Of a stretch of 64,000 nucleotides of DNA, positions 40,466 to 59,723 are shown piece after piece. This DNA comes from Laetmonice hystrix (Eukaryota): NCBI GenBank assembly GCA_965235115.1, contig OZ249443.1, forward strand, positions 12,648,001-12,712,000, given 5' to 3'. Under the pieces are notes generated by a model. That model saw only the letters and a list, made by a program, of their open reading frames with translations, was not told the origin of the DNA and made no database searches. How positions within the stretch are numbered: the stretch's first letter is position 1; the number at the start of each line of letters is the position of its first letter. Position numbers and translations under genes: made by a program.

Positions 40466-40662
40466 CTACGGATGGCTACATGCCCCATCCCGCCACACCG
40501 TGCCGACCGAACACGGCATATTCCAACAACCGCCCCATTTGTCGCACTGGATGAACTTGGTAGAATCCTTGTAGTTAGTGAAGTGGAAGTTTTTGTTAGG
40601 CCCAGGGGATCCATTGCAGAGTTTCTTGTGTTCGGGGTCGGTGCACCTGTTGTCATCCTCGT
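40466..40662 (-). CDS. Exon 34 (terminal): CBM14-like domain ([16 protein letters not shown]...[29 protein letters not shown])
   Basis: ATTTTAG| acceptor; 197 nt to TAG at 40468-40466. Confidence 0.9.
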
Positions 40663-58600: not shown

Positions 58601-59723
58601 CTTCCCATCCCTCATCACATTGGCACTTGGCGCCTCCTGCCGAGTCAGTGCACGTACCATGCACACACGGGTTCGGCGTGCACGGATTTTTCTCTAAACA
58701 ATTAAAATAAAGGTAGAATTCGGACGACTGTTCATAATAGGTGATGACGGAATAATTCCAATACATATTTCGTGTTTGGTCAGAAGCTTCGTACTTTTGA
58801 AGTTCTCCTGTGCTCTTACCAATATCACATCTATCGCCGCTCCAGTCCTTGTCACACACACAGCGGTCTCCGACGCAGCGACCATGGACGCACGTAGTTG
58901 TGTCACACTTACTACCTGTTTCAGGAAGATTATCATAAAAGTGATTTTTAAAAAGACTGCAGTTTATATCCAAAATGTTCACAATTTTATACATACAGTT
59001 TTTAGTTACACCGATCAAAGAATGTTATGTATGCATCATAGCAATACAATATGTCTCTTTTAGACGATGAGTGGCCATATTACGAACGGAATTACTGTTT
59101 GAACGAAACTTTTGGCATTGAATCGCATTTTACGATGCAGATTTTATGAGCGATATGATTGAGCAGCGGCCTGATGTTGAGTGAGAATCGCCTTGATTCG
59201 GACCTGACCCTCCATCATGATCACAGACTCCGATTGCGTCGTTCCAGACTGTCCCGGGAGCACATGGCATCTCCCAACAACCGCCCCACTCATCGCACTG
59301 AACGAACTGTTTGGGATCGTCGTGAGCAAAGTGGAAGTTGTGATTTCCAGGGTGGCTATCCGGATGGCAGATGAGAATGTACTTGGGCTCAGTACACCTG
59401 TGACCGCCTAAAAACAATCCATGAATTAAGACGTAAGGATCAGCGGTGAACTGTAACGAATGACATGAAAACTTTGACCCGTGATACAAAAACACAAGCT
59501 CTTAAATAACACGTGTCATCAATAAAGTCAGGTAAAGTAATTTCACTAACGAAACGATCTAATTATACGAAACCATTGTACTCCAAGTCTTAACAAAGAC
59601 ATGTTTCATCGAATGAGCTTACATACCCAGTAGCTCGGGGATGGGTTCCTGTAGAGATTTCCCCAGAACAGTAGCCGGGCCAGCCAGGGCCAGGCCGCAG
59701 GCAATAAGGACTGTCCACATCAT
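40466..59723 (-). CDS. Multi-exon secreted EGF-repeat / chitin-binding type-2 (CBM14)-like domain protein; 34 exons, ~1661 aa, 22 EGF-like + 12 CBM14-like domains
   Basis: Manual exon assembly: every exon is open, flanked by AG/GT and phase 1, and internal exon lengths are multiples of 3; total 4986 nt including TAG. N-terminal signal peptide, TATA box upstream, AATAAA downstream; no transmembrane segment seen. Confidence 0.88.
41075..41185 (-). CDS. Exon 33: short EGF of terminal module ([37 protein letters not shown])
   Basis: 111 nt; tandem acceptor TAG-GAG could shift the start to 41182; donor |GTAAAT. Confidence 0.9.
41453..41662 (-). CDS. Exon 32: CBM14-like, unit 9 (one extra codon, DKPKNPEC; HLPN variant)
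   Basis: 210 nt, TAAG|ATAAAC...|GTAACT. Confidence 0.88.
42172..42279 (-). CDS. Exon 31: short EGF, unit 9
   Basis: 108 nt, intact splice sites. Confidence 0.92.
42603..42809 (-). CDS. Exon 30: CBM14-like, unit 8
   Basis: 207 nt, intact splice sites. Confidence 0.9.
43325..43432 (-). CDS. Exon 29: short EGF, unit 8
   Basis: 108 nt, intact splice sites. Confidence 0.92.
43756..43962 (-). CDS. Exon 28: CBM14-like, unit 7
   Basis: 207 nt, intact splice sites. Confidence 0.9.
44480..44587 (-). CDS. Exon 27: short EGF, unit 7
   Basis: 108 nt, intact splice sites. Confidence 0.92.
44911..45117 (-). CDS. Exon 26: CBM14-like, unit 6
   Basis: 207 nt, intact splice sites. Confidence 0.9.
45631..45738 (-). 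CDS. Exon 25: short EGF, unit 6
   Basis: 108 nt, intact splice sites. Confidence 0.92.
46061..46267 (-). CDS. Exon 24: CBM14-like, unit 5
   Basis: 207 nt, intact splice sites. Confidence 0.9.
46780..46887 (-). CDS. Exon 23: short EGF, unit 5
   Basis: 108 nt, intact splice sites. Confidence 0.92.
47211..47417 (-). CDS. Exon 22: CBM14-like, unit 4
   Basis: 207 nt, intact splice sites. Confidence 0.9.
47936..48043 (-). CDS. Exon 21: short EGF, unit 4 (VHG, WRG variant)
   Basis: 108 nt, intact splice sites. Confidence 0.92.
48367..48573 (-). CDS. Exon 20: CBM14-like, unit 3
   Basis: 207 nt, intact splice sites. Confidence 0.9.
49083..49190 (-). CDS. Exon 19: short EGF, unit 3
   Basis: 108 nt, intact splice sites. 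Confidence 0.92.
49514..49720 (-). CDS. Exon 18: CBM14-like, unit 2
   Basis: 207 nt, intact splice sites. Confidence 0.9.
50239..50346 (-). CDS. Exon 17: short EGF, unit 2 (VHG, WRG variant)
   Basis: 108 nt, intact splice sites. Confidence 0.92.
50670..50876 (-). CDS. Exon 16: CBM14-like, repeat unit 1
   Basis: 207 nt, [73 protein letters not shown]|...|GTAACT. Confidence 0.9.
51388..51495 (-). CDS. Exon 15: short EGF, repeat unit 1
   Basis: 108 nt, [40 protein letters not shown]|...|GTAAGC. Confidence 0.92.
51662..51973 (-). CDS. Exon 14: fused short-EGF + CBM14-like module (no internal intron)
   Basis: Continuous 312-nt frame [15 protein letters not shown]...[22 protein letters not shown]...KVCTGTP; TTAG| and |GTAACT. 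Confidence 0.92.
53024..53140 (-). CDS. Exon 13: EGF ([37 protein letters not shown])
   Basis: TCCACAG| acceptor, |GTAAGT donor, 117 nt. Confidence 0.92.
53406..53516 (-). CDS. Exon 12: EGF ([35 protein letters not shown])
   Basis: GAACAG| acceptor, |GTAAGT donor, 111 nt. Confidence 0.92.
53872..53985 (-). CDS. Exon 11: EGF ([36 protein letters not shown])
   Basis: TTTCTCAG| acceptor, |GTATGT donor, 114 nt. Confidence 0.93.
54413..54443 (-). pseudogene. Truncated EGF exon remnant ([10 protein letters not shown] plus donor)
   Basis: 3' third of an EGF exon with donor |GTAGGT; upstream is AT-rich with stops and no usable acceptor. Confidence 0.65.
54663..54773 (-). CDS. Exon 10: Ca-binding EGF ([35 protein letters not shown])
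   Basis: TTTGCAG| acceptor, |GTAAGT donor, 111 nt. Confidence 0.94.
55056..55166 (-). CDS. Exon 9: Ca-binding EGF ([34 protein letters not shown])
   Basis: TTCTTACAG| acceptor, |GTGGGC donor, 111 nt. Confidence 0.92.
55597..55710 (-). CDS. Exon 8: Ca-binding EGF ([35 protein letters not shown])
   Basis: TTTCCAG| acceptor, |GTGAGT donor, 114 nt. Confidence 0.94.
55812..55925 (-). CDS. Exon 7: Ca-binding EGF ([36 protein letters not shown])
   Basis: CACAG| acceptor, |GTAAGG donor, 114 nt. Confidence 0.93.
56062..56175 (-). CDS. Exon 6: Ca-binding EGF ([36 protein letters not shown])
   Basis: Poly-T+AG acceptor, |GTAATC donor, 114 nt. Confidence 0.93.
56361..56474 (-). CDS. Exon 5: EGF ([34 protein letters not shown])
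   Basis: TTTCTAG| acceptor, |GTACGA donor, 114 nt. Confidence 0.9.
56704..56838. mobile_element. Palindromic MITE-like hairpin (AGGCCCATATACAC termini)
   Basis: 65-bp arms with 2 mismatches and a 5-nt loop; TAA left and TTA right. Confidence 0.75.
57005..58457. mobile_element. Decayed, internally deleted DNA transposon, probably Kolobok-type, in intron 4
   Basis: THAP relic (+) converging on an acidic ORF with GYMYEP (-, 58258-57905); right end reads TTAA|AGATCATATTG on the minus strand; left end uncertain (TTAA|AG at 57005). Confidence 0.45.
57222..57543 (+). pseudogene. THAP-domain relic (transposase N-terminus), frameshifted
   Basis: MVFYAAIGR / [36 protein letters not shown] / [10 protein letters not shown] spread over three frames; the two N-terminal Cys positions read TAT and CGT. 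Confidence 0.8.
58583..58693 (-). CDS. Exon 4: EGF ([33 protein letters not shown])
   Basis: TGTTTAG| acceptor, |GTGAGT donor, 111 nt. Confidence 0.92.
58820..58915 (-). CDS. Exon 3: short tenascin-type EGF ([28 protein letters not shown])
   Basis: AAACAG| acceptor, |GTAAGA donor, 96 nt. Confidence 0.9.
59204..59407 (-). CDS. Exon 2: CBM14-like domain 1 ([14 protein letters not shown]...[28 protein letters not shown])
   Basis: Acceptor TTTTTAG|GC; 6 Cys. The only phase-1 GT after the domain is a weak CAG|GTCCGA, giving 204 nt, so the 3' end is less certain. Confidence 0.75.
59627..59723 (-). CDS. Exon 1: signal peptide ([32 protein letters not shown])
   Basis: ATG 55 nt downstream of the TATATAAG box; hydrophobic core ending at small residues; donor G|GTATGT, phase 1. 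Confidence 0.85.

What the first reader, a model, noticed from the sequence alone, without database searches (positions are those of the whole stretch)
40466..59723. Large secreted EGF / CBM14-like 'bead-string' protein built from an amplified two-exon module
Seen: a 34-exon frame giving signal peptide - CBM-like - 11 EGF - (short EGF + CBM-like) x 11, ending with no transmembrane or hydrophobic GPI-type tail. Known: CBM14/peritrophin-A domains bind chitin, and Notch/fibropellin-type Ca-EGF arrays form rigid rods. Inference: a multivalent glycan-binding protein with one binding head, an EGF stalk and a tail of 11 binding modules, which could cross-link chitin-like matrices or agglutinate microbes. 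I do not recognise this architecture. Pipelines would probably label it fibropellin-like or Notch-like and miss the CBM-like part.
Basis: partly seen in the sequence, partly recalled or inferred. Interest (0 to 1): 0.8.

Follow-up and report, generated by a model that had tools for sequence, protein, structure and literature searches.

The report
Secreted EGF/CBM14 repeat matrix protein
A marine-invertebrate (spiralian, probably annelid) gene encodes a 1661-residue secreted protein in which a peritrophin-type (CBM14) domain and a short EGF domain were recently copied eleven times behind an 11-EGF stalk; it is a real and unusual arrangement of ordinary domains, but what it binds and whether it is expressed are untested.

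Summary
On the minus strand, 34 exons (59723..40466) join with GT-AG introns, all in phase 1, into one 4986-nt frame. The product reads signal peptide, CBM14, 11 EGF, then 11 x (short EGF + CBM14). There is no other hydrophobic segment.

The "CBM-like" domain belongs to CBM14/peritrophin-A: Pfam scores pass the cut-off, a profile matches solved CBM14 chains, and two AlphaFold models give CBM14 structures as the top 13-14 PDB matches.

Eight ~1150-bp units are 97-99.7% identical, introns included, so the amplification is recent. Exons vary less than introns and dN/dS is about 0.2-0.4, which indicates constraint. Two tandem paralogues upstream carry the unamplified forms.

The function is not shown. 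No RNA run exists for this organism. The residues essential for chitin binding in Avr4 (W100, D102) are absent from the amplified domain. The two best sequence matches among solved structures (EHEP, Der p 23) are reported not to bind chitin.

Best reading: a secreted multivalent cross-linker of a fibrous matrix, most likely chitin. The genome has many chitin-synthase loci. No protein with this alternating architecture turned up among relatives or in papers. I rate it a new variant of a known kind, of moderate interest.

The parts
59779..59785 (-). TATA-like box (TATATAA), 62 nt upstream of the ATG
   Evidence: sequence
59627..59723 (-). Exon 1: ATG and signal peptide ([21 protein letters not shown]...)
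   Evidence: only hydrophobic window of the protein; 100% identical over 92 nt to paralogue B
59204..59407 (-). Exon 2: N-terminal CBM14 domain (N type)
   Evidence: Pfam PF01607 25.9 bits against cut-off 22.1; 6 Cys
58820..58915 (-). Exon 3: EGF 1 (tenascin/teneurin-type short EGF)
   Evidence: PF23106 25.0 bits against 24.3
58583..58693 (-). Exon 4: EGF 2
   Evidence: PF00008 31.5 bits against 21.5
57161..58400 (.). Dispersed repeat inserted in intron 4 (not part of the protein)
   Evidence: 649 first-look candidates in the genome, listed copies 83-98% identical; missing from the matching intron of paralogue B
56361..56474 (-). Exon 5: EGF 3 (7 Cys; O-glucose motif C-x-S-x-P-C)
56062..56175 (-). 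Exon 6: EGF 4 (EIDEC, Ca-binding-like)
55812..55925 (-). Exon 7: EGF 5 (EIDEC, Ca-binding-like)
   Evidence: PF00008 44.2 bits; PF07645 23.0 bits, below its cut-off of 27
55597..55710 (-). Exon 8: EGF 6 (NIDEC, canonical Ca-binding motif)
55056..55166 (-). Exon 9: EGF 7
54663..54773 (-). Exon 10: EGF 8 (DINEC, canonical Ca-binding motif)
53872..53985 (-). Exon 11: EGF 9
53406..53516 (-). Exon 12: EGF 10 (7 Cys)
53024..53140 (-). Exon 13: EGF 11
51662..51973 (-). Exon 14: module 1, short EGF + CBM14 (R type) fused in one exon, without the internal intron
   Evidence: AlphaFold model m961e1beae0f3, CBM part pLDDT about 90; top 14 PDB matches are all CBM14
41186..51495 (-). Modules 2-10: nine ~1150-bp tandem units, each with a short-EGF exon and a CBM14 exon. 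Short-EGF exons: 51495-51388, 50346-50239, 49190-49083, 48043-47936, 46887-46780, 45738-45631, 44587-44480, 43432-43325, 42279-42172. CBM exons: 50876-50670, 49720-49514, 48573-48367, 47417-47211, 46267-46061, 45117-44911, 43962-43756, 42809-42603, 41662-41453
   Evidence: units U2-U9 are 97-99.7% identical and U10 is about 95%; CBM exon PF01607 24.4 bits against 22.1; variable sites 2.5% in exons and 7.0% in introns, dN/dS about 0.23; Logan contigs here have 3-7 times the depth of the unique flank
41075..41185 (-). Exon 33: short EGF of the last, diverged module
40466..40662 (-). Exon 34: C-terminal CBM14 (C type) and stop codon (40466-40468)
   Evidence: no Pfam hit, but AlphaFold model m7f49279bf319 has pLDDT 84 and its top 13 PDB matches are all CBM14; 98% nt identity to the last exon of both paralogues
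40120..40125 (-). AATAAA, 340 nt after the stop
63881..64000 (-). End of the last exon (C-type CBM14) of paralogue B, which continues beyond the window

Best explanation
This is a real, intact, lineage-specific gene for a large (about 180 kDa before glycosylation, 12.6% Cys, pI about 5.2) secreted extracellular protein. Shown: the gene model, the signal peptide, the absence of any anchor, 12 CBM14-fold domains, 11 Notch/fibropellin-type EGFs and 11 shortened EGFs. Also shown: very recent tandem amplification of a [PT linker - short EGF | CBM14] two-exon unit, purifying selection on the exons, and two unamplified tandem paralogues. Paralogue C reads CBM-11 EGF-CBM. Paralogue B reads CBM-11 EGF-CBM-PT linker-short EGF-CBM. 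Together with this gene they form a stepwise series. Inferred: the protein is an elongated, multivalent cross-linker of an extracellular fibrous matrix. The 11-EGF stalk acts as a partly Ca-stiffened spacer. The twelve CBM14 'beads' each bind weakly and gain avidity through their number. The most likely ligand is the animal's own chitin (chaetae, tube, cuticle or gut lining), because the genome carries many chitin-synthase loci and related CBM14 proteins are matrix components in other spiralians. Because every exon is phase 1-1, unequal crossing-over or exon skipping changes the number of beads without breaking the frame. That explains how the array grew and predicts length variants.
For: Gene model. 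Six Cys per domain exon. Signal peptide only. TATA box and AATAAA. CBM14 membership: Pfam 25.9 and 24.4 bits against 22.1; profile A2 against PDB chains gives EHEP 1.2e-8, Der p 23 1e-6, Avr4 1e-5, a chitinase CBM 1.2e-5, CHIT1 2e-4 and squid beak chitin-binding protein 3e-3; Foldseek top 14 and top 13 matches are all CBM14 for two models; AFDB clusters are named chitin-binding type-2. EGF: PF00008 at 44 and 31 bits; O-glucose, O-fucose and Asx-hydroxylation motifs. Recent amplification. Constraint: dN/dS is 0.38 (A against B), 0.22 (A against C) and about 0.23 among units, and 2.5% of exon sites vary against 7.0% of intron sites. Multi-copy in reads. Paralogue series. Chitin synthase loci: 25 matches over the cut-off at a dozen or more places. 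Spiralian CBM14 relatives sit in VWA-(EGF)-CBM14 matrix-type proteins: Paralvinella P0289, Littorina P0007, Helobdella P0126. ChtBD2 proteins are tube-matrix components expanded by tandem duplication in a tubeworm (PMC8476170).
Against: There is no expression evidence, because no RNA run exists for this organism. Chitin binding is not shown and known determinants are missing. The equivalents of Avr4 W100 and D102, both essential, are V and T in the amplified R-type domain and A and S in the C-type; only the N-type keeps the Asp. Avr4 K84 is Met here. Only the Gln69 equivalent is conserved. The usual C-D-W motif after the last core Cys is lost in this gene, although paralogue B's R-type and paralogue C's N-type keep it. 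EHEP and Der p 23, the best sequence matches among solved structures, do not bind chitin (PMC10619976). Two of the six canonical cysteines are missing and a different pair has been added. The short EGFs of the array fall below the Pfam cut-offs and fold with low confidence.
Confidence: 0.55

Rival explanations
1. The protein is the same secreted multivalent molecule, but the amplified CBM14-fold domain binds something other than chitin. The ligand could be dietary polyphenols or tannins as in Aplysia EHEP, another polysaccharide, or a protein partner. The array would then work as a scavenger or precipitant, or as an adhesive or mucus component.
For: EHEP (three peritrophin-A domains, binds tannic acid, no chitin binding) is the best profile match among solved structures, and Der p 23 (no chitin binding) is second. 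The Avr4 W100 and D102 equivalents and the C-D-W motif are lost specifically in this gene's R- and C-type domains, whereas paralogue domains B_R and C_N keep C-D-W. One Avr4-family member is reported to bind pectin instead (title and abstract of PMC8104879).
Against: Critical chitin-binding residues are not conserved even among proven chitin-binding CBM14s (PMC10619976), so their absence is weak evidence. EHEP's top E-value comes from summing three weak domains. The closest relatives by sequence are matrix-type VWA-CBM14 proteins of annelids and molluscs.
Confidence: 0.22
2. It is a humoral immune lectin or agglutinin. The many CBM14 heads would recognise chitin on fungi or other microbes and clump or coat them, in the manner of tachycitin or the VCBP-type chitin-binding immune proteins.
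For: It is multivalent and secreted. It is evolving fast in copy number within a three-gene tandem cluster, a pattern common in immune genes. Tachycitin is among the fold matches.
Against: There is no domain typical of immune effectors or receptors. dN/dS is well below 1, with no sign of diversifying selection, and the repeats are homogenised rather than diversified. The same doubts about chitin binding apply as above.
Confidence: 0.12
3. The array is not a working gene product. It could be an unexpressed recent duplication product on its way to decay, or its copy number could be an assembly artefact.
For: No RNA evidence is available. Very young repeats can stay open by chance. The only DNA runs available come from the same sample as the assembly.
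Against: All 34 exons are open with intact splice sites. Exons vary about three times less than introns across units, and dN/dS is about 0.2-0.4. The units differ from one another (nine distinct versions), which rules out simple false duplication. Contig depth in the array is 3-7 times that of the flank. The paralogues keep the same exon structure.
Confidence: 0.07

Closest known systems
Multi-CBM14 extracellular proteins (insect peritrophins and obstructors, C. elegans CBD-1/CPG, fish 'mucin-like' chitin-binding proteins)
   Same: They are secreted and carry many tandem peritrophin-A/CBM14 domains separated by short Pro/Thr linkers. Arrays often arise by recent tandem duplication, for example P0001, P0002 and P0005.
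   Different: Those proteins use mucin-like linkers, not EGF domains, between the CBM14s, and they have no EGF stalk. Their CBM14s keep the canonical six cysteines. Best identity to this domain is 34-43% for the repeat proteins.
Spiralian VWA-chitin-binding matrix proteins (Pif/BMSP-like), e.g. Paralvinella P0289 (VWA + 2 EGF + 5 CBM14), Littorina P0007, Helobdella P0126
   Same: They share the same CBM14 subfamily motif (NPC..FYFP..D..KF[IV]QC.EWG.C.VM.C..G..W......C). EGF and CBM14 occur together in one annelid member. They are extracellular matrix context proteins of lophotrochozoans (PMC11291548).
   Different: This gene has no VWA or laminin-G domain. EGFs and CBM14s alternate eleven times here rather than forming separate blocks.
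Notch / fibropellin-type EGF arrays
   Same: Eleven consecutive one-exon, phase-1 EGFs carry the C-x-S-x-P-C (O-glucose), C-x4-[ST]-C (O-fucose) and Asx-hydroxylation motifs and x-I-D/N-E-C junctions.
   Different: There is no transmembrane segment, LNR, DSL or avidin-like domain. Only 2 junctions match the strict Ca-binding consensus and 2 more are EIDEC. Pfam EGF_CA scores below its cut-off.
Avr4-type 'extended' CBM14 (PDB 6BN0, 4Z4A)
   Same: Both models predict an alpha-helix ahead of the beta core, which among solved CBM14s only Avr4 has. The Gln69 equivalent (F-I-Q-C) and the W-N-D loop are conserved.
   Different: The essential W100 and D102, and also K84, are not conserved. The disulfide pattern differs. 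Avr4 is a fungal single-domain effector.
EHEP (Aplysia polyphenol-binding protein) and mite allergen Der p 23
   Same: They are the best sequence-profile matches among solved structures. Der p 23 shares the four-Cys core and the D-P-H-K-F..C..W stretch.
   Different: They are small proteins with 3 or 1 domains and are reported not to bind chitin. They have no EGF domains.

Membership tests
CBM14 / peritrophin-A (Pfam PF01607, SMART ChtBD2) | Score above the Pfam gathering cut-off (22.1 bits) | tested here: met
   N-type exon 2 scores 25.9 bits and R-type exon 16 scores 24.4 bits. The fused exon 14 and the C-type exon 34 gave no CBM_14 hit. So 2 of 4 tested pieces pass, and the other R-type exons are at least 97% identical to exon 16.
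CBM14 / peritrophin-A | Distorted beta-sandwich CBM14 fold | tested here: met
   The CBM part of the module-1 model has pLDDT about 90, and the C-type model has mean pLDDT 84. The top 14 and top 13 Foldseek PDB matches are all CBM14 (CHIT1, Der p 23, Avr4, EHEP, tachycitin, Blo t 12), with probability up to 1.00 and rmsd 1.1-2.1 A over 40-50 columns for the best. E-values are only 0.02-1 because the domain is small.
CBM14 / peritrophin-A | Six cysteines in the canonical spacing, paired C1-C3, C2-C6, C4-C5 | tested here: inconclusive
   Each domain has six Cys. By alignment only four are canonical (C1, C3, C4, C5, as in Der p 23). Canonical C2 and C6 are absent, and an extra pair (PEC ... GQC) is added that co-occurs across the subfamily. 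Pairing was inferred from the alignment, not measured on coordinates.
CBM14 / peritrophin-A | Residues shown to bind chitin in characterised members | tested here: not met
   The positions of Avr4 W100, D102 and K84 read V, T, M in the R type, V, D, M in the N type and A, S, M in the C type. Only Gln69 is conserved. The CHIT1 Trp465 position, aligned from memory of that sequence, is Ile/Val. Such residues are not conserved between proven binders either, so this lowers the claim of chitin binding rather than the claim of family membership.
CBM14 / peritrophin-A | Binding to chitin in vitro | not testable with these tools
   This needs recombinant protein and pull-down or ITC assays.
EGF-like domain (PF00008) | Score above the cut-off and six-Cys EGF pattern | tested here: met
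   Exon 7 scores 44.2 bits and exon 4 scores 31.5 bits against 21.5. Exons 3-13 each hold 6-7 Cys.
Calcium-binding EGF (PF07645) | D/N-x-D/N-E/Q-C start with the Asx-hydroxylation motif; Pfam cut-off 27 bits | tested here: inconclusive
   Pfam gives 23.0 bits, below 27. Two EGFs have the strict motif (NIDEC, DINEC), two have EIDEC, and the rest have IDDC, IDHC, IDRC or IDNC. Eight EGFs carry C-x-D/N-x4-F/Y-x-C.
Tenascin/teneurin-type short EGF (PF23106) | Score above 24.3 bits | tested here: not met
   Exon 3 passes at 25.0 bits. The short EGFs of the repeated modules score 17.3 and 20.7 bits and fold with pLDDT about 50. Their first loop is cut down to one residue (C-D-C). They are EGF-like by cysteine pattern only.
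Pif/BMSP-like VWA-chitin-binding shell/matrix proteins | A VWA domain N-terminal to the CBM14 domain(s), often with laminin G | tested here: not met
   The 34-exon product has no VWA or LamG domain. Only the CBM14 subfamily is shared.
Notch / fibropellin | TM segment with LNR/ankyrin (Notch), or a C-terminal avidin-like domain (fibropellin) | tested here: not met
   There is no hydrophobic segment after the signal peptide, and all 34 exons are accounted for by the signal peptide, EGF and CBM14 domains.

The most novel reading that the evidence does not exclude
The amplified R-type domain is a re-wired CBM14: it has lost the C-D-W motif and two canonical cysteines and gained a new disulfide and an N-terminal helix. 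On this reading it has taken on a new ligand or a new binding mode. The frame-neutral two-exon unit then lets bead number vary between alleles or isoforms, so that it works as a tunable molecular ruler or cross-linker for fibre spacing in a spiralian extracellular matrix. The three-gene cluster (0, 1 and 10 extra modules) would capture this innovation in progress.
Probability: 0.15. Interest if true: 0.6.

Novelty: new variant of a known kind. Interest (0 to 1): 0.35.

Why it matters
The gene shows a new extracellular architecture being built from stock parts. A frame-neutral exon pair is copied about ten times within one gene, and two neighbouring paralogues preserve the earlier stages. Chitin-based structures of spiralians (chaetae, tubes, radulae, shells) are poorly understood at the protein level. 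For them, a 12-valent CBM14 protein on a rigid EGF stalk is a concrete candidate organiser or cross-linker to test. The gene also offers a natural series (N, R and C types, and paralogue domains with and without C-D-W) for asking which CBM14 residues decide ligand choice. That question is still open, because some solved members bind chitin and others do not. Without expression or binding data it remains an annotation-level finding.

Tried and rejected
- RNA evidence: two searches for sequencing runs (9.5 kb of the gene, then the 312-nt fused exon) returned only DNA-type runs from one sample and study, so the splice junctions could not be checked.
- Laying reads gave only short Logan contigs. 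They show raised depth in the array but cannot span it or count units.
- TRF missed the array because its longest period is 500.
- A full-length homologue or architecture search was not possible. A spliced protein has no single reference, and the word-index search is limited by length. I therefore searched the representative library with one CBM exon. The best single-domain identity was about 55%, with no orthologue and no alternating EGF/CBM14 protein among the 150 listed hits. A further 55 hits were not seen.
- The ESM Atlas feature search of the fused module gave only weak EGF clusters.
- Species identification: COX1 was found on contig 35 with TGA as Trp, but its stop-free pieces are too short for the length-limited search. 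HSP70 places the organism among lophotrochozoans, with annelid and mollusc best names at 77-78% and unnamed ENA hits up to 88%. Looking up the 88% hit gave only an ERZ accession.
- I first recalled Avr4 W63/N64/D65 as contact residues. The paper shows the key residues are W100 and D102, with Q69 and K84 contributing, and that the NDN loop acts indirectly. I dropped the W-N-D argument for chitin binding.
- The antisense ORF at 51612-51974 (+) is the mirror of exon 14 and was dismissed.

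
Full report
**The gene model.** Open frames rich in cysteine lie on the minus strand between 40.4 and 59.8 kb. I listed phase-compatible AG acceptors and GT donors for each frame and found one consistent model. It has 34 exons, from the ATG at 59723 to the stop at 40466-40468. Every intron is GT..AG and every junction is phase 1. The CDS is 4986 nt, giving 1661 residues with no internal stop. 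Exon 1 encodes [21 protein letters not shown]..., the only hydrophobic 19-residue window in the protein. The C-terminus has no hydrophobic tail. A TATATAA box lies 62 nt upstream of the ATG, and an AATAAA lies 340 nt after the stop.

**Domain content.** Each domain exon holds exactly six cysteines. Two EGF exons hold seven and the fused exon holds twelve. This is an internal check on the splice sites. The protein therefore reads: signal peptide, CBM14 (N type), 11 EGF, then 11 x (short EGF + CBM14). The first module sits in a single exon (51973-51662) and the other ten are split into two exons each.

**The repeat array.** From 51495 to 41186 there are nine tandem units of 1094-1156 bp. Units U2-U9 are 97-99.7% identical over their whole length, introns included. 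U10 is about 95% identical to them. The intron-less first module is about 92% identical over what aligns, and the last module has diverged. U2/U4 and U3/U5 pair at 99.7% and 99.3%, which indicates a recent two-unit duplication. The amplification is therefore very young, or the units are being homogenised.

**Constraint on the repeats.** Among U2-U9, 8 of 315 exon columns vary against 58 of 826 intron columns (2.5% against 7.0%). Mean dN is 0.007 and mean dS is 0.030. The exons are under constraint despite their youth.

**Is the array an assembly artefact?** Public runs that hold the locus all come from one sample, most likely the sample used for the assembly, and are kept only as short contigs. 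Contigs inside the array have 3-7 times the depth of the unique flanking contig. This fits many copies but cannot count them. The nine distinct unit versions also argue against a simple false duplication.

**The CBM-like domain: sequence evidence.** Pfam CBM_14 (PF01607) scores 25.9 bits on the N-terminal domain and 24.4 bits on the repeated domain, against a cut-off of 22.1. The fused exon and the C-terminal domain gave no hit. An HMMER scan of 1.84 billion representative proteins with one repeat exon found 205 proteins at E <= 0.001. All of the named ones looked up are CBM14 proteins.

**The CBM14 subfamily.** The nearest domains share the motif NPC..FYFP..D..KF[IV]QC.EWG.C.VM.C..G..W......C. 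They come from annelids (Paralvinella, Owenia, Helobdella), molluscs (Littorina, Mizuhopecten) and unnamed marine metagenome fragments. Identity never exceeds about 55%.

**The CBM-like domain: structural evidence.** A profile of this subfamily matches solved CBM14 chains:
- EHEP, 1.2e-8
- Der p 23, 1e-6
- Avr4, 1e-5
- a chitinase CBM, 1.2e-5
- CHIT1, 2e-4
- squid beak chitin-binding protein 3, 3e-3

AlphaFold models of module 1 (CBM part pLDDT about 90) and of the C-terminal domain (mean pLDDT 84) give only CBM14 structures as their top 14 and top 13 PDB matches. AFDB clusters named 'chitin-binding type-2' also match. Membership of the CBM14 fold family is well supported for all three domain types.

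**Departures from the canonical CBM14.** By alignment, only four of the canonical six cysteines are present, as in Der p 23. A new pair (PEC ... GQC) has been added. Both models place a helix ahead of the beta core. Among solved members this feature is known only from Avr4.

**Does it bind chitin?** This remains open. In Avr4, W100A and D102A abolish chitohexaose binding, Q69N and K84A weaken it about 20-fold, and the NDN loop acts indirectly (PMC6128652). By alignment, only the Gln is conserved in all twelve domains. The W100 and D102 positions read V and T in the amplified R type and A and S in the C type. The N type keeps the Asp. The common C-D-W motif is present in paralogue B's R-type and paralogue C's N-type domains but is lost in this gene.

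The EHEP structure paper states that critical chitin-binding residues are not conserved even among proven binders. It also states that EHEP and Der p 23 do not bind chitin (PMC10619976). Those two proteins are the best sequence matches here. The fold therefore does not settle the ligand.

In favour of chitin, the genome has Chitin_synth_2 matches above cut-off at a dozen or more loci. The same CBM14 subfamily occurs in VWA-(EGF)-CBM14 matrix-type proteins. ChtBD2 proteins are abundant, tandemly expanded components of a tubeworm's chitin tube (PMC8476170).

**The EGF domains.** The stalk EGFs are ordinary Notch/fibropellin-type modules. PF00008 scores 31-44 bits. Seven carry C-x-S-x-P-C sites, three carry C-x4-[ST]-C sites and eight carry Asx-hydroxylation motifs. 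Only four of their junctions look Ca-binding (NIDEC, DINEC and two EIDEC), and Pfam EGF_CA scores below its cut-off. The short EGFs of the array have the pattern C-x-C-x4-C-x4-C-x-C-x8-C. They score below the Pfam cut-offs and fold with low confidence, so they are EGF-like only by pattern.

**Genomic context and history.** The window is contig 8, 12,648,001-12,712,000, of a 627-Mb assembly in 35 contigs. All genomic matches to the module lie in one cluster. Immediately upstream on the same strand are two intact paralogues with the same exon plan:
- Paralogue B (window-like 63881 to about 70000) reads CBM-11 EGF-CBM(R)-Pro/Thr/Ala linker-short EGF-CBM(C).
- Paralogue C (78895-84034) reads CBM-11 EGF-CBM(C).

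Identity between the genes is mosaic. Exons 1-10 and exon 34 are 94-100% identical between A and B, while exons 11-13 are 77-83% identical. Exons 5-7, 9, 10 and 34 are 95-98% identical between A and C. This suggests gene conversion. dN/dS is 0.38 (A against B) and 0.22 (A against C).

The [13 protein letters not shown] linker in this gene looks like a shortened form of B's Pro/Thr stretch. The amplified unit probably arose from a B-like CBM(R)-linker-short EGF segment; this step is inferred. All exons are phase 1-1, so unequal crossing-over keeps the frame.

**The organism.** HSP70 best-named matches are annelids, bivalves, Lingula and a nemertean at 77-79% identity. The mitochondrial COX1 uses TGA as a sense codon. 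The organism is a spiralian and probably an annelid; this is an inference.

**Comparison with what is known.** Among the 150 closest proteins, only P0100, P0101 and P0143, plus the fragments P0003 and P0132, join an EGF to this CBM14. None of them alternates the two. Paralvinella P0289 has VWA + 2 EGF + 5 CBM14. Full-text searches for EGF with chitin-binding, peritrophin or ChtBD2 terms found no described alternating array. These searches are not exhaustive.

**Verdict.** The gene is real and intact and has a new arrangement of known domains. The best reading is a secreted multivalent matrix cross-linker, with chitin the most likely but unproven ligand. I rate it a new variant of a known kind, of moderate interest.

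Noticed in passing
G000:C8:12711881-12718000 (window-like 63881 to about 70000; loci L013, L011, L012), minus strand: Paralogue B is an intact-looking gene reading CBM14-11 EGF-CBM14-Pro/Thr/Ala-rich linker-short (possibly truncated) EGF-CBM14. Exon 1 is 100% identical and exons 2-10 are 94-100% identical to the studied gene, while exons 11-13 are only 77-83% identical. The mosaic suggests gene conversion.
   Followed up: partly
G000:C8:12726895-12732034 (window-like 78895-84034; loci L015, L016), minus strand: Paralogue C reads CBM14-11 EGF-CBM14 and is the simplest member of the cluster. Its N-terminal CBM14 keeps the canonical C-D-W motif and is 53% identical to paralogue B's R-type domain.
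   Followed up: partly
window 51662-51973: The first short-EGF + CBM14 module has no intron between its two domains, whereas all ten later modules have one of about 510 bp. This is either a precise intron loss in one unit or an intron present only in the amplified lineage.
   Followed up: no
window 57161-58400 (intron 4): A dispersed repeat with 649 first-look candidates across the genome, of which 40 were scored; the listed copies are 83-98% identical. It is inserted in this gene's intron 4 and absent from paralogue B's matching intron. It looks like a young interspersed element of unknown type.
   Followed up: partly
window 19728-20652: A minisatellite of 36-bp units, 25.7 copies, 95% matching, open in several frames on both strands.
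   Followed up: no
window 8015-8238; 13004-13294; 24124-24556; 27655-28150: Further tandem repeats: (TC)n of 112 copies; a 41-bp unit x 7.1; a 130-bp unit x 3.4; a 20-bp unit x 24.8. The first 40 kb of the window showed no obvious long coding exons.
   Followed up: no
proteins P0100, P0101 (Logan contigs of 2.4 and 1.9 kb): These are short proteins with a Cys/Asp/Gly-rich N-terminal part, two EGFs and one C-terminal CBM14 of this subfamily. P0100 starts with a lipoprotein-like signal (..LLASAAGC). The source organism is unknown. They are the nearest examples of an EGF directly followed by this CBM14.
   Followed up: partly
G000, many contigs (e.g. C1:35058190, C3:7.9-9.5 Mb, C29:15.0-19.7 Mb): There are Chitin_synth_2 matches above cut-off at a dozen or more loci. 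Such an expanded chitin synthase repertoire is typical of lophotrochozoans.
   Followed up: no
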